From the NCBI RefSeq assembly GCF_000143415.4, contig NW_003314672.1, positions 1 to 7,095 on the forward strand: a stretch of 7,095 nucleotides of DNA. The letters are read 5' to 3'. The translations under genes were made by a program, and so were the position numbers. Positions 1 through 7,095 of this stretch are shown here, in pieces (within the stretch, counting starts at the first letter, position 1; each line of letters starts with the position of its first letter). Source of the stretch: Selaginella moellendorffii. Taxonomy: Eukaryota > Plantae > Lycopodiophyta. The notes under the pieces were generated by a model that was not told where the DNA came from, did no database searches, and saw nothing but the letters and a program-made list of their open reading frames with translations.

Positions 1-779
1 TTTCGGCTCCACTTTAGGGCCTGTCTCACATTAGCCTTTCCGGAAGCCTAATATTATTTAAACTCAAGGACATTTAACCCTAAATATTTTAATACTATTA
101 ACCAATTAAAAAAAAGGATGCACTTTTATTCATAGACCTTTTCTTTTTATATTTGAACCTGATCAATTATCTTTCAAGTTGTTCTTATTAATTGCTTACA
201 TACCTTTGTTATTAAGTGGAATGCAATCTCCAAGATTTAACATCTATACTACTATAGCCTTAAAAGAAAGCAATGGTGAAAGTGATAGTACTTGATAAAC
301 TAAAAGTGGAGTGACTCATAGTTATACTTTAACATTCCTTTATAGCTTAGCATGGTAAAGCACATGATTCTATTATCACTCTAAACCTTAAGAATTCTAC
401 TTTTATCCATGCCCAATATAGAAGCATTTGTCTGGCATTAGATGCAATCTAATGGTAGTGAAGCCCATCCATTACCTCCACGACTATCCTTTCAAGCTGG
501 GTGAACGTGTTATAGCCTCTTGGTCTTCTAACAAAATTGCAACCTCTCTATAGAACACCATAACAACCTCTCCATAGCATTATATTCTCACCTCTTGTTC
601 TTGTTGGGCATGGCAAAAGAACCAAATTGCACATTATCACTCTTGAATGGCTTGAAATTCTGCCCATGACATCGGCCATTGCTATGGGCATGAAGCCCCA
701 TCCCTGGCATACAGTTCGTGAAATATCCAATGCTTGTGTTTTTCTCATACTACTATTCTATATGTACCAATAAGACACC

Positions 780-980
780 GACACGTGTCCTCTAAATGTC
801 TTTTCTACCCTTTTTTTCTAGTGCACGCCATATTGTCTTGAAGTAACAAAAGTGACAAACCACCAGAGATCTGCAAAAGCCTATCGAACGCATCCGCCCA
901 CCAAACCTTTTGTTCTGTGAGTTGATGAAAAGAAGTTACGACCTTCTCCCTGCCATAGCATTAAAAGTTACACATGCATG
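780..980 (+). promoter_or_regulatory. Candidate cis-elements upstream of BAHD-A: palindromic G-box/ABRE GACACGTGTC (780-789), AC/MYB-like ACCAAAC (900-906) and RY motif CATGCATG (973-980)
   Basis: Motif matches only. The G-box and RY motif are also present at 6338-6347 and 6531-6538. Confidence 0.35.
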
Positions 981-1056
981 CGAACTTTTAGACCAGACAA
1001 GTCCTCTTGTGTGTTTCTAGGCTACTCTCTTCAAATCATGCGCTAGAAGAACAATC

Positions 1057-2469
1057 ATGTCCAATGTGGTTCATATAGCCTCCGTCTGCACGATCGTCCC
1101 AGCGATTCCAACGCGCCAGCCTTGTACTCTCTGGCTTTGCAACTCTCAGATCCAGCTCCTGTCCGAGAACTATCTCAAGCAAGTCTACTATTTCCCAGAA
1201 GCAGTGGATTCGTCACCAGGCTCCTTCGATCGATTGGTGACGAGCTTAAAAGTATCCTTGTCTCAGGTTCTCGTTCCATACTACCCAATAGCGGGGAGGC
1301 CCCGGATCGCCGGTCTCGACCGCCCGGTTCTCGAGTGCAACAACCAAGGCGTCGAATTTGTGGTGGCATTTGCCAATGCGAGCTTCCACGACTGGGGCGA
1401 TTCCATGAAGCACTGCTCAATCGAGCATGAGCTCAACCAGGCACAGACCGAGATCACGGATCACGAGAACTTCCCACAGCTCAAAGTCCAGGCAAGTCCG
1501 GAGACTTTACGTTGACCTGTTCTGACCGTGTTTGCAGGTCACCAAGTTCCGGTGTGGCGGGATCGCCCTCGGCCTCGTCACCACCCACATTGTCACCGAC
1601 GGCTCGTCCATCTTTGCGTTCTTCAAGGCCTGGTCGGATATCCATCAGGGATTGCCACCGCCGAATCCACCGCCATCATTCGACTCCAGCATCCTCAGGG
1701 CCCGAGATCCCCCCAGCATCAAGATGCCCATCCGGGACTACGTCGCGGTGGCACCGTCCCTGGCCCAGGATCACACTGGAAAGTCCGGGGAGGATATCTC
1801 TCCCAAATACCACGTCCGGGAATTCCACATGAGCGAGCTCCAGCTCTCGCATCTCAGGCACGAGATCGCATCCGGCCCGTTCTCCTACGGCAGCTTCCCG
1901 ACATCCTTCGAGGCCGCCGCGGCGCTCGTCTGGAAATCCATCACCGAGGCGCGGGATCTCGTCGACACCGCCATCGCCACATTCGTCTACTCGGGCTCCG
2001 CCAAGGCCGGCAAGAACCGGCGGCATCCCCCAATCCCGGACGAGTACTGCGGCACCTCCGCCATGACCCTCGTCCTCCCGTGTCCGGCGCGCGACCTCAA
2101 GAATAAGCACATCTCCTTGGCCGTTCGCCTCGTCCACGACGACATCCGGGCCATCACCCACGAGCGATTCCAATCCACCATTGACTGGATGGAGCTGGAA
2201 GGAATCGGCGGCCCCGGGCGCAAGGAGATCGCGGTCAACATGAGGGCCGAGATGGCGGTCTACTTCGTTGACCTGGTCACCTTCCCCGTCTACGGCGTTG
2301 ACTTTGGGACCCACTTCTCGCTGGTGCTAGAGCCGTGGTATGGCAACGGGGTGGTGGTGTTTCTTCCCACTGCCCAGGGAGGGACGCGAGAGTGGTCATG
2401 CTCCTCGAGGATGAAATGAAGAGGTTGCTGCAAAGCGAGCTCCTCGCCAAGTTCGCCACCTTGGAATGA
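1057..2469 (+). pseudogene. BAHD acyltransferase-family gene A, two exons (1057-1491, 1538-2419 as read; ancestral stop at 2467-2469); probably degenerating
   Basis: Exon 1 has BAHD N-terminal motifs (SLSQVLVPYYPIAGR, ECNNQGVEFVVA, PQLKVQ). Exon 2 begins VTKFRCGGIALG and has HIVTDG (HXXXD, 1586-1600). DFGWG is reduced to DFG-T (2300-2311), a 12-nt deletion relative to gene B. A frameshift near 2390 moves the homologous tail VVMLLEDEMKRLLQSELLAKFATLE* (cf. gene B AIRLPENQMKKLLEHQFFLKFATPV*) into another frame. Spliced product as read is 438 aa. Confidence 0.85.
1492..1537 (+). other. 46-nt GC-AG spliceosomal intron of BAHD-A
   Basis: CAG|GCAAGT donor, CTGAC branch-like motif at 1522-1526 and TTTGCAG| acceptor. 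Removal joins ...LKVQ to VTKF... in phase 0. Confidence 0.9.
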
Positions 2470-2508
2470 AAGGGATTTGAGGCACGAGAGACTAGAGCAA
2501 GTAAATTG

Positions 2509-2609: not shown

Positions 2610-3121
2610 TCAAGGAGAGTCGGAGGATTTGGTGGCACGAGCGGTGCACATCCTGGCACAAGACAACTTTATGGTGCCTCGGCTCGGCGGGGAAGGCACC
2701 TCCTTTCCCTTGCCGAGCCCTGGCAGCGAGAGCTTGGGCTTGGATCGATGAGCATCGATGCCGGTGGGCGCTCCAGATCTTGGCACCGGTCTCGAAGCCT
2801 GATCAAAGAATTGGATCAAAGAATTGGATGGATCGAAGGGAAAAGAATCTCATTTTCGTTTCATACCTCGGATATGCGAGGGAACCTCCGTGCGAACCAC
2901 GCCGCTGGAAACCACGCCCACGCGATCTGCGTCGCCGTCTCTCGGATCAGACCATAGACCAGCTCCGTGACCGGTCCCTCGATCGTCCCAGTGATCACCC
3001 TGCTGACCGGTCCCTCGATCATCCCCGTGAGCATCTTATCGAGCGGGCCCTCGATCAACCCCGTGAAGCTAAGTTTGATCACCAGCGGCGCTACCATCGA
3101 GATGAGCAGGGACTTGGCCAT
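2610..3121 (-). CDS. Unknown small repeat-containing protein X1, two exons (3121-2867 and 2798-2610), about 147 aa
   Basis: Exon 1 reads MAKSLLISMVAPLVIKLSFTGLIEGPLDKMLTGMIEGPVSRVITGTIEGPVTELVYGLIRETATQIAWAWFPAAWFARRFPRISE and ends at GAG|GTATGA. A 68-nt intron (2866-2799) ends TTTGATCAG|. Exon 2 reads ASRPVPRSGAPTGIDAHRSKPKLSLPGLGKGKEVPSP...DSP*. Peptide sequence, donor and intron phase are conserved in paralog X2. Confidence 0.65.
2957..3088. repeat. Degenerate 12-bp tandem array (11 units, GA-initial, mostly GATC/GACC) with 36-bp higher-order period, coding in X1
   Basis: gaccagctccgt gaccggtccctc gatcgtcccagt gatcaccctgct gaccggtccctc gatcatccccgt gagcatcttatc gagcgggccctc gatcaaccccgt gaagctaagttt gatcaccagcgg. 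Confidence 0.85.
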
Positions 3122-3326
3122 GAGCCCCAGCCCATCGCTCCGCCCGCAAGCTTCCTCCCCTCCAAGAAGAAAAACTAGGGCTGCGAAATGGCCAAGGGGG
3201 AGGGATTCATGATTGCGCTGGATGGTTCATGCTCCACGGTCCTTGTCAGAAGAAGAATTTCTTGCATAGCCAAATATCTTCTTTCTACGCGCTTGTAACG
3301 ATCTTTATCAGTTCATATTGTCAAGT

Positions 3327-3450
3327 TTGGTCAACATAGTCGATGGAAGTCCTAGGTCGTGAGCTCACTTCGAGTGCTTAGATTGACATGGTGGCCTCCA
3401 CAAGATTAGTGTCCATGTCGACTGTCGTGGCGATCTCCAACGGTAGCTAG
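3327..3450 (+). pseudogene. Remnant of a BAHD-B-like 5' end (B'): upstream region plus a 20-codon relic ORF at 3388-3450
   Basis: ttggtcaacata..aggtcgtgagctc..cgagt..gacATGgtggcctcca..agtgtccatgtcgactgtcgt..gcgatctccaac matches 4528-4705 (ttggtcaacata..aggtcgtgagctccgagt..gacATGgtagcgtcca..agtgtccgtgtcgactgtagt..gcgctctccaac). Translation MVASTRLVSMSTVVAISNGS* vs B MVASISSVRSVSVSTVV..ALSN. Confidence 0.75.
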
Positions 3451-3828
3451 GTAAAAGTCAAGTCATTCGTTTCTGTCGTTCGCAGCTATGGCATCTCAAC
3501 AGTGGAAGATATCTTCAAAATCGCGTACTACGGCAGAGGACATGTCTGTAAGAATCCATTCCATAGAAGAAGATGAGAAGAAGCTCAGCTAACAGGGCTG
3601 CAAACCTCGAGGTCAATGCACATTTGCAAGCCGATTTAATGACCAAGAAATTCCAGCTTTTGCCAAGTGTATCGGCGGCTTATAAGAGAATATATATAAA
3701 AATTACTATCATTGTTACTGCTTCCAATTGTTTCACACATAATAATGTTGCTTCATGCTTGATTGAGCGCATAGATCAATCCCAGGACTTTCAAGCAATT
3801 ACATGTTTATAGGCCTAGCTTCAAAGCT

Positions 3829-4271
3829 TTAAAACTTCGAGCTAGAATTCTTTCCCTTGCGGAGCTCCGGCAGCGGGATCTTGGGTTTGGATCGATGACC
3901 ATCGTTGCGGGTGGGAGCGGGCTCTCCAGATCTTGGCACCTAAAGAATTAGATGGTTCGAAGGAAAAGAATCACATTTCCGTTTCATACCTTTGTGATGC
4001 GAGGAAACATCTGTGCGAACCACGCCGCTGTCAGCCACGCCCACAGGATCTGGGCCGCCGTCTCTCGGATCGGGCCATAGACCAGCTCCGTGACCGGTCT
4101 TTGTGATCATCCTGTTGATCGGCCCCTCGATCATCCCTGTGATCGTCCTGTCGACCGGCCCCTCGATCATCCTGGTGATCGGTCCCTCGAACTAAATTTG
4201 ATCACCATCCCCGCCAGCATCGATACGAGCAGGGACTTCGCCAAGAACTTCGTCGCGTCCCCCCAGCCCAT
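3829..4271 (-). pseudogene. Paralog X2 of the unknown repeat protein, two exons (4271-3990 and 3939-3829), with two compensating 1-nt frameshifts and a premature stop
   Basis: ATG at 4271 gives MGWGDATKFLAKSLLVSMLAGMVIKFS. A 1-nt deletion near 4191 leads to TGA at 4169-4167. The shifted frame reads FEGPITRMIEGPVDRTITGMIEGPINRMIT, and an extra base near 4100 restores the frame to PVTELVYGPIRETAAQILWAWLTAAWFAQMFPRITK. Then AAG|GTATGA, a 50-nt intron (3989-3940) ending TTCTTTAG|, and exon 2 VPRSGEPAPTRNDGHRSKPKIPLPELRKGKNSSSKF*. Confidence 0.65.
4080..4211. repeat. Degenerate 12-bp tandem array (11 units, including one 13-mer and one 11-mer) in X2
   Basis: gaccagctccgt gaccggtctttgt gatcatcctgtt gatcggcccctc gatcatccctgt gatcgtcctgtc gaccggcccctc gatcatcctggt gatcggtccctc gaactaaattt gatcaccatccc. 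Confidence 0.85.
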
Positions 4272-4371: not shown

Positions 4372-4609
4372 CCTCAGAAATGGAAAGGAGAAAGATTGCT
4401 ACCCGGTCGAGGGTTTTCTTGTTAAATATTAGAATTCGATCGCCACCTTTGAGTTCCCTCGACCAGTCCAGTGAACGTAAATCGCCAGTCGCCAGTGGAA
4501 GACAAGTCTCGAACGTGGTCAACTTTATTGGTCAACATAAGCGATTGGTTCTAAAGCACGAGGAGCTCGTGGGCAAGGTCGTGAGCTCCGAGTAGATTGG
4601 ATCAACGAC

Positions 4610-6154
4610 ATGGTAGCGTCCATAAGCTCGGTAAGGTCAGTGTCCGTGTCGACTGTAGTTCCCCAGATCCCGACCCGGCAGCCCTGCGTTCTCGCGCTCT
4701 CCAACTTCCAGAGCTACTTTTCGTTTGAGCGCTACATCAAACAAGTGTTCTACTTCTCCGCCCCGGGATCTTCAGCTCTCAAGCAGCACGATGACCAGGA
4801 AGAAGAAGAAGAAGATCAAGAACAGAAGAGCCCTCGGATCGATAACCACGACGAAGAGGAGTTCCAGCGCCTGGTTTGCAGCATGAGAGAGTCTCTGTCG
4901 CGGTTGCTCGTTCCATACTACCCTCTGGCGGGGAGAATGCGGCGGCGAGAGCGGCTAACAACGATCCAGGAGCTCCACTGCAACGACGCGGGCGTCATGG
5001 TGGTGGCCGCGATGGCTAACACAGCCTTGGGCGACGCCCGGCAGTGCCCCATCGAGCACGAGCTCTACCCGGAACCCAGGGTCAGGGATCCCGCCAACGC
5101 GCCGCTGCTAAAAATCCAGGCAAGTAGCTCCGTTGACTCTGTTGACTAAAAGAGTGTTGACTGGCTGTAAGCGTTGACTGGCATTGTGTGTTCACAGGTG
5201 ACAAAGTTCCAGTGTGCCGGGATTGCTGTGGGAGTGCTCACCTGCGAGAACATCCTCGACGCCTCCTCCTCCTTCCCGTTCCTCCGGGCGTGGGGGGAGA
5301 TCCACCGGGGCCTCGCACTGGCGGTGGCTCCATCGTTTGATTCCAGCGTGCTCAAGCCCCGCGATCCTCCGCAGGTCAATCTCCCCGTCCGCGACTACGT
5401 CGTCGCCCCACCGCCAGCAAGCACGGTGGAAGCCATGGCCAAATCCTCCCACGACGCCATCCCCGACCGCCAGAGGCTCTTCCACATCGCCCCCGATCGA
5501 GTCCGCGAGCTCGTTGCCGAGGTCCAGCGCGGGAGATTCTTCTCCTCTCGTGACGAGCCGCCGCCGAGCTCGTTCGAGGCCATCTCCGCCATGATCTGGA
5601 AGTGCGTCGCGGACGTCAAAGACCTGGACGATTCGGAGAGCATGACTTACATCTACGCGCTCTCCACCAAAGGACCCAAGCGCTGGAGCCCCGAGATCCC
5701 GAGCCACTACTGCGGCAGCTCCGCTCACATCCCCTGCCTGGCTGCTCCCGTGGGCGAGATACGCAAGAACCACATCTCCCACGCCGCCAAGCTCCTCCGC
5801 GACGATATCCATTCCGCCACCCAGGAGCGCATCCAGTCCGCCATCGACTGGATGGAGCTCCACCTCCGGGCCGGGATCTTCGTGGACGACAACTTCCCGC
5901 TGCCAAGGTGGTCGGGGAGAGCGATCAACAGCAACAGCCTCACGGCATTCCCGATCTACGAGCTCGACTTTGGATGGGGGAGGCCGCGACACTTCTCCTT
6001 CGTCTTGGATGCCGAGCCGGGCAGTGGAGCCGCCATTCTTCTTCCCACTCGAGATGGCGGACGAGACCGGCATCTGGCGATTCGGCTGCCCGAGAACCAG
6101 ATGAAGAAGTTACTCGAGCACCAGTTCTTCCTCAAGTTCGCCACCCCGGTGTAG
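4610..6154 (+). CDS. BAHD acyltransferase-family protein B, two exons (4610-5119, 5198-6154), 488 aa; catalytic His replaced (ENILD), DFGWG intact
   Basis: SLSRLLVPYYPLAGR, CNDAGV, PLLKIQ|VTKFQCAGIAVG, PSFDSSVL and FPIYELDFGWGRP (DFGWG at 5966-5980). Both exons are uninterrupted and the stop TAG is at 6152-6154. Confidence 0.9.
4799..4813 (+). repeat. (GAA)5 coding microsatellite in an acidic loop of BAHD-B
   Basis: Encodes EEEEE within QHDDQEEEEEDQEQ. Confidence 0.8.
5120..5197 (+). other. 78-nt GC-AG intron of BAHD-B
   Basis: CAG|GCAAGT donor and TTCACAG| acceptor. Same position and phase as in gene A. Confidence 0.9.
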
Positions 6155-6168
6155 CAAACAAGTTGTAG

Positions 6169-7095
6169 ACAAAATTGCTCTCCATAGCACTATGTTCTCA
6201 CCCCTTGTTCTTGTTGGGCATGGCAAAAGAACCAAATTGCACATTATCACCATTCTGCCCATGACATCGGCCATTGCTATGGGCATGAAGCCCGATCCCT
6301 TCTCATACTGTTATCCTATATGTACCAATAAGACACTGACACGTGTCCTCTTTTTCTACTACTACCCTTTTTCTTCTAGTGCACGCCATATTGTCTTGAA
6401 GTAACAAAAGTGACAAACCACCAGAGATCTGCAAAAGCCTATCGAACGCATCCGCCCACCAAATCTTTTGTTCTGTGAGTTGATGAAAAGAAGTTACGAC
6501 CTTCTCCCTGCCATAGCATTAAAAGTTACACATGCATGCGAACTTTTAGACCAGACAAGTCCTCTTGTGTGTTTCTAGGCTACTCTCTTCAAATCATGCG
6601 CTAGAAGAACAATCATGTCCAATGTGGTTCATATAGCCTCCGTCTGCACGATCGTCCCAGCGATTCCAACGCGCCAGCCTTGTACTCTCTGGCTTTGCAA
6701 CTTTCAGATCCAGCTCCTGTCCGAGAACTATCTCAAGCAAGTCTACTATTTCCCAGAAGCAGTGGATTCGTCACCAGGCTCCTTCGATCGATTGGTGACG
6801 AGCTTAAAAGTATCCTTGTCTCAGGTTCTCGTTCCATACTACCCAATAGCGGGGAGGCCCCGGATCGCCGGTCTCGACCGCCCGGTTCTCGAGTGCAACG
6901 ACCAAGGCGTCGAATTTGTGGTGGCATTTGCCAATGCGAGCTTCCACGACTGGGGCGATTCCATGAAGCACTGCTCAATCGAGCATGAGCTCAACCCGGC
7001 ACAGACCGAGATCACGGATCACGAGAACTTCCCACAGCTCAAAGTCCAGGCAAGTCCGGAGACTTTACGTTGACCTGTTCTGACCGTGTTGCAGT
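6169..7095 (+). repeat. Copy 2 of the direct duplication, beginning 14 nt after the BAHD-B stop codon and running off the window
   Basis: acaaaattgc...tccatagca...gggcatggcaaaagaaccaaattgcacattatcac etc., shared with 531 onward. Confidence 0.95.
6615..7095 (+). CDS. BAHD gene C (recent duplicate of A): exon 1 at 6615-7049, GC-AG intron from 7050 to about 7094, truncated by window end
   Basis: 432 of 435 nt identical to exon 1 of A by eye comparison, with the same CAG|GCAAGT donor. Confidence 0.85.

What the first reader, a model, noticed from the sequence alone, without database searches (positions are those of the whole stretch)
5243..5260. Intact BAHD with catalytic His replaced by Glu (HXXXD to ENILD)
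Seen: gene A has TT-HIVTD-GSS, while the aligned position in B is TC-ENILD-ASS (GAG at 5246-5248). Going from His (CAY) to GAG needs at least two substitutions, yet the 488-aa ORF, splice sites and DFGWG are intact. Established: this His is the general base of BAHD acyl transfer, and CER2-like BAHD proteins work without needing it. Inference: B is a selectively retained pseudo-enzyme, a scaffold, or a neofunctionalised enzyme with a different (for example acid-catalysed) chemistry.
Basis: partly seen in the sequence, partly recalled or inferred. Interest (0 to 1): 0.75.

Follow-up and report, generated by a model that had tools for sequence, protein, structure and literature searches.

The report
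Old glutamate-type BAHD acyltransferase clade
A spikemoss (Selaginella) enzyme gene really does carry glutamate where its family's catalytic histidine should be; the swap is old, shared by several expressed and conserved sister genes, and looks like a working variant, not damage.

Summary
Gene B (4610-6154, one GC-AG intron, 488 aa) is a Selaginella moellendorffii BAHD protein with GAG (Glu) at 5246-5248, aligned to the catalytic His153 of HCT. DFGWG is intact.

GAG is not an error. It is present in four genomic copies and in RNA contigs from four studies, three of which show the intron spliced out.

B copies evolve under purifying selection (dN/dS 0.08-0.14).
- Glu also occurs in at least four other S. 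moellendorffii BAHD lineages (P0003, P0007, P0017, P0024) and in one fern protein.
- These proteins form one well-supported clade.
- The His-bearing neighbour A and its relative P0009 are nested inside that clade, and an AU test rejects the alternative.
- So Glu is most simply the ancestral state and A's His a reversion.
- A is a broken pseudogene in this window, and A copies evolve nearly neutrally (dN/dS about 0.7).

The site takes only Glu or His, with both GAG and GAA codons. I therefore favour a working enzyme that uses the carboxylate as proton shuttle, though this is untested. I found no paper describing such a plant clade.

The scan found this before on other DNA: two first-reader notes on other pieces of the same genome report the same swap.

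The parts
4610..5119 (+). Gene B exon 1 (170 aa), N-terminal part of the BAHD domain. It includes an acidic low-complexity insert at about 4778-4861.
   Evidence: ORF and translation. PF02458 match at 5e-14. 98-100% identical to exon 1 of three public B copies. The insert has pLDDT 58-72 in the model of P0001.
5120..5197 (+). Gene B intron, 78 nt, GC-AG (donor GCAAGT).
   Evidence: Sequence. Contigs of runs X4, X8 and X13 skip 78 nt at 5116->5195 with 4 nt of ambiguity, which fits 5120-5197. The X1 contig retains the intron.
5198..6154 (+). Gene B exon 2 (318 aa plus stop), holding the motif region and the C-terminal domain.
   Evidence: Translation. PF02458 match at 1.6e-35 over profile positions 139-431 of 434. 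HCT structures are the best PDB match.
5243..5263 (+). Motif C-ENILD-A in place of x-HXXXD-G. The Glu codon GAG is at 5246-5248, and Ala replaces the usual Gly after Asp.
   Evidence: aligned to His153 of HCT. No variant in four RNA runs or in three other genomic copies.
5216..5218 (+). GCC (Ala) in the near-invariant F-x-C-G-G motif. This change is specific to the window copy.
   Evidence: All other genomic copies have G at 5217. All four RNA runs read G at full depth. G177 is 90% or more conserved in alignment A1.
5939..5941 (+). Leu at the column of the oxyanion-stabilising Trp (AtHCT Trp371). Asn at 5933-5935 sits at the Thr369 column.
   Evidence: Column tally: Trp is the commonest residue outside the clade, Phe/Trp in the Lycopodiaceae sisters, and Leu/Met throughout the Glu clade. 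The roles of Thr369 and Trp371 are taken from PMC13119808.
5966..5980 (+). Intact DFGWG motif.
1057..2470 (+). Gene A, the His-bearing neighbour, a pseudogene in this window. Exon 1 is 1057-1491, the GC-AG intron is 1492-1537 and exon 2 starts at 1538. The His codon CAC is at 1586-1588. A 12-bp deletion lies after 2308 and a 10-bp deletion after 2391.
   Evidence: Alignment to the intact A copies in L001 and L003. PF02458 matches. dN/dS of 0.70-0.78 among A copies.
6615..7049 (+). Exon 1 of the next A copy (A'). This shows the A-B unit is tandemly repeated with a period of about 5.56 kb.
   Evidence: ORF, PF02458 match, 99.3% identical to A exon 1.

Best explanation
Gene B is a functional, expressed member of an old subclade of BAHD acyltransferase-fold proteins. 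In this subclade the general-base His of HXXXD has been replaced by Glu, and the oxyanion-stabilising Trp by Leu or Met. So far the subclade is seen in Selaginella and one fern.

Shown here:
- Glu is real, shared by descent among paralogues and maintained under purifying selection.
- The rest of the BAHD scaffold is kept, including the F-x-C-G-G, D-G/A, W202, W304, Y-x-G-N/S and DFGWG landmarks.
- The protein is confidently predicted to fold like HCT.
- The neighbouring His-bearing gene A belongs to a lineage nested inside this Glu clade.

Inferred:
- The Glu carboxylate does the proton-shuttling job of the imidazole in an acyl-CoA-dependent reaction, so B is still an enzyme, with a remodelled catalytic centre and an unknown substrate.
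- The only other state seen at the site in this clade is His, the canonical base. This toggling between two residues that can both shuttle protons is the main argument that the site is catalytic and not merely tolerated.
- B is not a shikimate HCT, despite its automatic name.
For: - Family and fold: PF02458 matches on both exons. The AlphaFold model of the 98%-identical public protein P0001 has pLDDT 90.8 and pTM 0.90, and its best structural matches are HCTs with TM 0.84-0.88.
- Glu at the His153 column.
- GAG is present in four genomic copies and four RNA runs, with the intron spliced in three studies.
- Purifying selection: dN/dS is 0.075-0.14 among B copies, for example 16 synonymous versus 4 non-synonymous differences, binomial p = 2e-7 against neutrality. 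Two P0007-type copies give dN/dS 0.21, p = 4e-5.
- Other Glu bearers: P0003 (AELIVDG, codon GAG), P0007 and its neighbour (AEVVLDG and AELVLDG, codon GAA), P0017, P0024 and Adiantum P0019.
- P0003 transcripts appear in the same runs at higher contig depth than B.
- Tree: the Glu clade has 99/99 support, B+(A,P0009) has 100/98, and the minimum is 2 state changes. Glu monophyly is rejected by AU at p = 0.00016, at 9e-7 without the motif columns, and in both halves of the protein.
- Hallmark BAHD columns are conserved in the Glu clade.
- Precedents for BAHDs without the His: the active Taxus BAPT with His->Gly (PMC11600153), and EPS1.
Against: - No activity, substrate or structure has been measured.
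- In several BAHDs, mutating the His abolishes activity (PMC5489795; H153A in PMC13119808).
- The Trp that stabilises the tetrahedral intermediate is also lost. A canonical acyl-transfer centre is therefore doubly impaired, which also fits a non-catalytic or different-chemistry role.
- The RNA evidence comes from assembled contigs whose 3' flank belongs to the terminal B copy, and they read G at 5217. Expression of this particular window copy is therefore not shown.
- One public allele (L003) carries a 1-bp insertion in exon 2.
- Sampling outside S. moellendorffii is thin: one fern protein and no other Selaginella species.
- B sits on a long branch (0.70), so its exact position within the Selaginella clade could be affected by branch-length artefacts.
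Confidence: 0.5

Rival explanations
1. B is an enzyme with a different chemistry. The Glu clade would have left acyl transfer for another reaction in the same pocket, such as thioester hydrolysis, a lyase reaction or an isomerisation/lactonisation. EPS1 and COSY made this kind of move in angiosperms.
For: Both the general base and the oxyanion-stabilising Trp are replaced across the clade. The Arg handle and Thr of HCT are also absent in B. B has a long stem branch of 0.70 followed by strong constraint. There are BAHD-fold precedents: EPS1 as a lyase and COSY. The structures of both are recovered as fold matches.
Against: DFGWG and the other CoA-channel landmarks are kept. The site reverts to His, the canonical acyl-transfer base, in the A/P0009 lineage. 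That is easier to explain if the reaction type stayed the same.
Confidence: 0.22
2. B is a non-catalytic partner or scaffold (a pseudo-enzyme) that works by binding another protein or a ligand, as CER2-LIKE proteins do with KCS condensing enzymes.
For: CER2-LIKE proteins work without the His, and two of them lack it naturally (PMC5489795). That review also reports a large Selaginella-specific BAHD expansion near CER2-LIKEs. In B two catalytic residues are replaced.
Against: B keeps DFGWG, which CER2-LIKEs lack. It matches CER2 and CER26-like structures far worse (1e-11 to 1e-13) than HCTs (4e-41). A merely tolerated site should drift, yet the clade shows only Glu (two synonymous codons) or His.
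Confidence: 0.2
3. B is a young duplicate on its way to becoming a pseudogene. On this reading Glu is a disabling lesion that has not yet been followed by frame disruption.
For: The array is unstable. It holds broken A copies, a truncated A copy and a public B allele with a 1-bp insertion. The window copy also has Ala in the conserved C-G-G motif.
Against: dN/dS is 0.08-0.14 with p around 1e-7. Spliced transcripts exist. Glu is shared with paralogues only 47% identical and with a fern protein.
Confidence: 0.04
4. The GAG codon is an assembly or sequencing error.
For: None was found. The only window-specific letter nearby is C at 5217.
Against: The same codon is present in three other genomic copies from the public assembly. 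Contigs from four independent studies show no alternative letter at 5246-5248.
Confidence: 0.01

Closest known systems
Hydroxycinnamoyl-CoA:shikimate/quinate hydroxycinnamoyltransferase (HCT, BAHD clade V; for example 4g22, 5kjt and S. moellendorffii HCT 6dd2)
   Same: HCTs are the best sequence match (4e-41) and the best fold match (TM 0.84-0.88). B shares the two-domain BAHD fold, the F-x-C-G-G, D(G/A) and DFGWG landmarks, and NCBI's automatic name.
   Different: The four residues called indispensable for HCT catalysis are all different in B. His153 is Glu, Thr369 is Asn, Trp371 is Leu, and the aligned Arg356 position is Phe, although the alignment in that loop is uncertain. B also sits in a separate lycophyte/fern clade, not among HCTs.
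PtACT-1-type BAHD O-acetyltransferase of Phlegmariurus tetrastichus (P0016, WOJ51791.1, named 'acetyl transferase 1')
   Same: It is the nearest relative that belongs to a characterised pathway. It lies in the same 100%-supported lycophyte/fern clade and is 39% identical to B. A BAHD O-acetyltransferase called PtACT-1 acts in Lycopodium alkaloid biosynthesis (PMC10700139).
   Different: It keeps the His and falls outside the Glu subclade. That P0016 is the published PtACT-1 is inferred from the name only.
CER2-LIKE proteins (BAHD-fold cofactors of KCS in wax elongation)
   Same: They are BAHD-fold proteins whose function does not need the HXXXD His. CER2-LIKE1 and CER2-LIKE4 lack it naturally.
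   Different: They lack DFGWG and are associated with the ER. Their sequence match to B is distant, at 1e-11 to 1e-13.
Taxus BAPT (baccatin III 13-O-aminoacyltransferase)
   Same: It is a natural BAHD without the catalytic His that is still an active acyltransferase.
   Different: Its replacement is Gly, not Glu. It depends on Mg2+ and substrate-assisted catalysis, is a single enzyme and not a clade, and belongs to clade 6 in a gymnosperm.
Arabidopsis EPS1 and COSY
   Same: Both are BAHD-fold proteins recruited to non-acyl-transfer chemistry. EPS1 lacks the canonical His mechanism, and both are recovered as fold matches.
   Different: They lie in different clades. EPS1 is a young Brassicaceae-specific gene. 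Neither has Glu at the site, as far as I know from memory; this was not tested here.
Hanseniaspora guilliermondii HgAat1 (yeast alcohol acetyltransferase homologue)
   Same: It carries EXXXDA in place of HXXXDG, the same pair of changes as B's ENILD-A (PMC10070066).
   Different: It is a fungal Atf-type protein only distantly related to plant BAHDs. The motif was noted in silico only, and no activity has been assigned to it.

Membership tests
BAHD acyltransferase superfamily (Pfam PF02458 Transferase) | Significant match to the family profile over the whole domain | tested here: met
   Exon 1 scores 52 bits and exon 2 scores 123 bits against a cut-off of 22.7. Together they cover profile positions 54-431 of 434.
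BAHD acyltransferase superfamily (Pfam PF02458 Transferase) | Two-domain CAT-like fold | tested here: met
   This rests on a predicted model only. The model of P0001 (98% identical to B) has pLDDT 90.8 and pTM 0.90, and Foldseek finds HCT structures with TM 0.84-0.88.
BAHD acyltransferase superfamily (Pfam PF02458 Transferase) | HXXXD motif with the catalytic His | tested here: not met
   The motif is ENILD. Glu lies at the His153 column, and Asp is kept.
BAHD acyltransferase superfamily (Pfam PF02458 Transferase) | DFGWG motif | tested here: met
   DFGWG is at 5966-5980.
BAHD acyltransferase superfamily (Pfam PF02458 Transferase) | Acyl-CoA-dependent acyl transfer | not testable with these tools
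   This needs recombinant protein assays.
Shikimate O-hydroxycinnamoyltransferase (HCT), the automatic NCBI name of P0001 | Catalytic set of His153, Thr369, Trp371 and Arg356 (AtHCT numbering) | tested here: not met
   The aligned positions hold Glu, Asn, Leu and Phe. The Arg position lies in a poorly aligned loop.
Shikimate O-hydroxycinnamoyltransferase (HCT), the automatic NCBI name of P0001 | Placement inside the HCT clade | tested here: not met
   B falls in a separate lycophyte/fern clade with 100% support and a stem of 0.88. The HCT-named representatives lie in the other half of the tree.
CER2-LIKE clade | Absence of DFGWG and close sequence kinship to CER2/CER26 | tested here: not met
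   DFGWG is present. CER2-type chains score 1e-11 to 1e-13, against 4e-41 for HCT.
CER2-LIKE clade | Physical and functional partnership with a KCS condensing enzyme | not testable with these tools
   This needs interaction and elongation assays.
Glu-type (EXXXD) lycophyte/fern BAHD subclade, proposed here | Glu at the His column plus Leu or Met at the Trp371 column, and placement in the 99/99-supported clade | tested here: met
   B, P0003, P0007, P0017, P0024 and Adiantum P0019 carry Glu. The five full-length ones carry Leu or Met at the Trp column.

The most novel reading that the evidence does not exclude
Plants hold an old and so far undescribed class of BAHD enzymes in which a glutamate carboxylate has replaced the histidine imidazole as the catalytic base. 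The class has persisted through many duplications in Selaginella and survives in at least one fern. In one lineage (A/P0009) the site switched back to His. If so, the base residue of this fold is interchangeable in nature in both directions. It would also mean that routine filtering of sequences that lack HXXXD has hidden a whole active subfamily.
Probability: 0.4. Interest if true: 0.72.

Novelty: new variant of a known kind. Interest (0 to 1): 0.6.

Why it matters
The HXXXD histidine is treated as the defining catalytic residue of BAHD acyltransferases. Large surveys remove sequences that lack it; the 218-species study says so explicitly. A conserved, expressed clade under purifying selection that carries Glu, with an apparent reversion to His, gives a natural experiment on whether a carboxylate can serve as the base in this fold. 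It offers ready-made wild-type pairs for enzymology: B against A, and P0003/P0007 against P0009. It shows that automatic names such as 'shikimate O-hydroxycinnamoyltransferase' are wrong for these genes. It also points to unexplored specialised metabolism in lycophytes, where the nearest pathway-linked relative is an alkaloid O-acetyltransferase.

Tried and rejected
- Assembly error: rejected. Four genomic copies and four RNA runs agree on GAG.
- Recent disabling lesion or neutral decay: rejected by the dN/dS values and by the depth of the Glu clade.
- Single gain of Glu with A outside the Glu clade: rejected by the AU test. This holds with the motif columns removed and for each half of the protein separately, which also argues against partial gene conversion between the tandem neighbours as the cause.
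- CER2-LIKE membership: rejected on DFGWG and on sequence distance.
- Orthologues in other species: three word searches (B exon 2, P0003, Adiantum P0019) found no other Selaginella species and no further ferns. This is a limit of the collections, not evidence of absence.
- P0017 genomic locus: not on record, so its codon was not read.
- Naming the nearest outgroups returned only uncharacterised Diphasiastrum, Taxus, Ginkgo, Psilotum and Riccia proteins.
Only the parsimony count offered by treekit was used (2 changes).
- Literature: no paper with both 'BAHD' and 'EXXXD' concerns plants. The one hit is a yeast Atf homologue.
- My first exon 1 end for gene A (1489) was wrong by two bases. The correct end is 1491.

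Full report
**What is in the window**

The window is a stretch of a tandem BAHD gene array of Selaginella moellendorffii. The public protein P0001 ('shikimate O-hydroxycinnamoyltransferase [Selaginella moellendorffii]', 488 aa) is 98% identical to gene B's exon 2.
- Gene A lies at 1057-2470.
- Two small minus-strand ORF regions lie at about 2610-4271.
- Gene B lies at 4610-6154.
- Exon 1 of a further A copy starts at 6615.
- The window aligns at 93-97% to GL377569.1 (locus L001) with a different copy arrangement. On the alternative-haplotype scaffold GL377714.1 (L003) there is only one A and one B.

**The observation**

- Positions 5243-5260 read C-E-N-I-L-D, with GAG at 5246-5248.
- In the phmmer alignment to coffee HCT, the Glu lies opposite the first His of HHAAD, the catalytic His153.
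- Gene model: exon 1 is 4610-5119, a 78-nt intron is 5120-5197, and exon 2 is 5198-6154, giving 488 aa. DFGWG is at 5966-5980.
- The donor is GC, not GT. A has the same GC donor at the same position.
- Contigs from four studies were laid on 4400-6400. None shows another letter at the Glu codon. Contigs of three studies skip exactly the 78-nt intron, which shows they derive from spliced mRNA.
- The three other genomic B copies have the same codon.

**Limits of the expression evidence**

- All transcripts read G at 5217, giving Gly in the near-invariant F-x-C-G-G motif. The window has C there, giving Ala.
- All transcripts leave the window after 6166 into the 3' flank of the terminal B copy.
- So a B gene almost identical to this one is expressed, but transcription of this internal copy is not shown.
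- The 1-bp insertion of the public L003 B allele is not seen in RNA.

**Selection**

Nei-Gojobori counts were made exon by exon, without joining exons.
- B copies give dN/dS of 0.075-0.14 at dS of 0.04-0.05. One example is 16 synonymous versus 4 non-synonymous differences, p = 2e-7 against neutrality.
- The His-bearing A copies give 0.70-0.78, not different from neutral. They differ significantly from B (Fisher p = 0.004).
- A is visibly decaying. In this window it has lost WGRP of DFGWGRP through a 12-bp deletion and is frameshifted by a 10-bp deletion. L001 also holds a truncated, frameshifted A copy.

**Glu is not peculiar to B**

- P0003 is 47% identical to B and lies on another scaffold. 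It has AELIVDG with codon GAG, and the intron is at the same position.
- P0007 and a neighbouring copy have AEVVLDG and AELVLDG with codon GAA. Their mutual dN/dS is 0.21.
- P0017 and the partial P0024, both from S. moellendorffii, also have Glu. So does a protein of the fern Adiantum capillus-veneris, P0019, with SEMVVDA.
- P0003 transcripts appear in the same RNA runs at higher contig depth than B.
- Two first-reader notes on other pieces of this genome (s1-421649, s1-398962) report the same swap. I verified it independently for P0003 and the P0007 pair.

**Phylogeny**

- In a 58-row tree of the closest representatives, all lycophyte and fern relatives form one clade with 100% support and a stem of 0.88.
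- In a careful 26-row tree, the Lycopodiaceae sequences all carry His and lie outside. These include P0016, named 'acetyl transferase 1' of Phlegmariurus tetrastichus.
- A 99/99-supported clade holds every Glu protein plus the His pair A and P0009. The grouping B+(A,P0009) has 100/98 support.
- The fewest state changes on this tree is two: one gain of Glu and one reversion to His. The alternative is four parallel gains.
- A tree with the Glu proteins held as one group is rejected by the AU test (p = 0.00016). It is still rejected with the motif columns removed (p = 9e-7) and for the N- and C-terminal halves separately (p = 0.006 and 0.0006).
- Caveats: B has a long branch (0.70), sampling outside one species is thin, and a likelihood reconstruction of the site was not available.

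**What the protein looks like**

- Landmark BAHD columns are conserved in the Glu clade: L96, G108, R109, G128, Q170, T172, F174, C-G-G, D191, F198, W202, W304, P335, G343, D387 and DFGWG.
- The model of P0001 is confident (pLDDT 90.8, pTM 0.90). The exception is an acidic insert at residues of about 57-84.
- The model superposes best on HCT structures.
- The column of the Trp that hydrogen-bonds the tetrahedral intermediate (AtHCT Trp371; PMC13119808) is Leu or Met throughout the Glu clade and in the revertant P0009. It is Phe or Trp in the Lycopodiaceae sisters.
- B also has Asn at the Thr369 column and no Arg at the aligned Arg356 position. The HCT name is therefore not supported.

**Mechanism**

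Shown: the Glu is real, old and selected, and it sits in an otherwise well-kept BAHD scaffold.

Inferred: the site is still catalytic.
- In this clade the site takes only Glu (two synonymous codons) or His. Both residues can shuttle protons, whereas a merely tolerated site should drift.
- I therefore favour an acyl-CoA-dependent enzyme that uses the carboxylate as general base, with a remodelled oxyanion site and an unknown substrate (about 0.5, including uncertainty on reaction type).
- The rivals are a changed chemistry in the manner of EPS1 or COSY (about 0.2), a non-catalytic CER2-like partner (about 0.2), decay (0.04) and assembly error (0.01).
- Precedents that loss of the His need not kill function: CER2-LIKEs (PMC5489795), Taxus BAPT with a natural His-to-Gly change (PMC11600153) and EPS1 (PMC11605079).
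- From memory and untested here: NRPS heterocyclisation domains of the same superfamily replace HHxxxDG by DxxxxD and still condense.

**Novelty**

- The full-text search found no plant paper describing an EXXXD BAHD. The only hit is a yeast Atf homologue with EXXXDA, noted in silico.
- A 218-species BAHD survey states that it removed sequences lacking HxxxD, which would hide this clade.
- I rate this a new variant of a known kind, of moderate to good interest, and directly testable by ordinary enzymology.

- The spliced protein of the window's own B gene was never assembled. Its exons were searched and counted separately by reference.
- The public protein P0001 served as the full-length proxy for the wide search, the PDB search and the fold.

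Noticed in passing
window 1057-2470: In this window gene A, the His-bearing BAHD, is a pseudogene. A 12-bp deletion after 2308 removes WGRP of DFGWGRP, and a 10-bp deletion after 2391 shifts the frame. The A copies in L001 (6426-7861) and L003 (5604-7039) are intact. A copies evolve at dN/dS of about 0.7.
   Followed up: yes
window 1492-1537 and 5120-5197: Both paralogues use a very short GC-AG intron (46 and 78 nt, donor GCAAGT) at the same codon position. B's intron is confirmed by spliced contigs.
   Followed up: partly
window 5217: C in the window gives Ala in the near-invariant F-x-C-G-G motif. Every other genomic copy and all four RNA runs have G (Gly). The window copy may be a silent or slightly impaired array member, or an individual variant.
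   Followed up: partly
L003 about 11264 (exon 2 alignment column 676): The public alternative-haplotype B copy carries one extra G that shifts the frame. The deposited protein P0002 is a patched model around it. The insertion is absent from RNA contigs.
   Followed up: partly
window 4778-4861: There is an acidic low-complexity insert (HDDQEEEEEDQEQKSPRIDNHDEEE) in B exon 1. It is absent from the paralogues and is predicted disordered (pLDDT 58-72).
   Followed up: no
window 541-1056 versus 6170-6614: The upstream region of A is repeated before the next A copy, with indels. The A-B unit is a tandem repeat of about 5.56 kb. Copy number and order differ between this window and the two public scaffolds, which suggests unequal crossing-over or gene conversion.
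   Followed up: partly
window 2610-4271, minus strand: There are two related small ORF regions with short repeats of the I/V-E-G-P type, for example the 86-aa ORF at 2861-3121. They correspond to called genes without Pfam hits in L001 (8049-8533) and L003 (7358-7942). Other first-reader notes cover them (s1-421267, s1-421300).
   Followed up: no
L004 (GL377603.1:1023803-1045219) and L002: A second cluster holds only Glu-type BAHD genes: P0007, two further 451-452-aa copies and P0003, spread over about 40 kb. A class I glutamine amidotransferase / peptidase C26 gene lies among them.
   Followed up: partly
L005 (Logan SRR25391575 contig, 294-1655): P0047 is a 453-aa BAHD with NEILADG that sits in an HCT-like clade far from the lycophyte clade, so it is an independent His-to-Glu case in an unidentified organism. 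P0043 (Rhamnella rubrinervis) and P0144 have Arg at the same column.
   Followed up: no
L001 11681-21202: Downstream of the array lie a calmodulin-binding (CBP60-like) gene, a CbiX-domain gene, a protein kinase and a microbial-type terpene synthase (PF19086).
   Followed up: no
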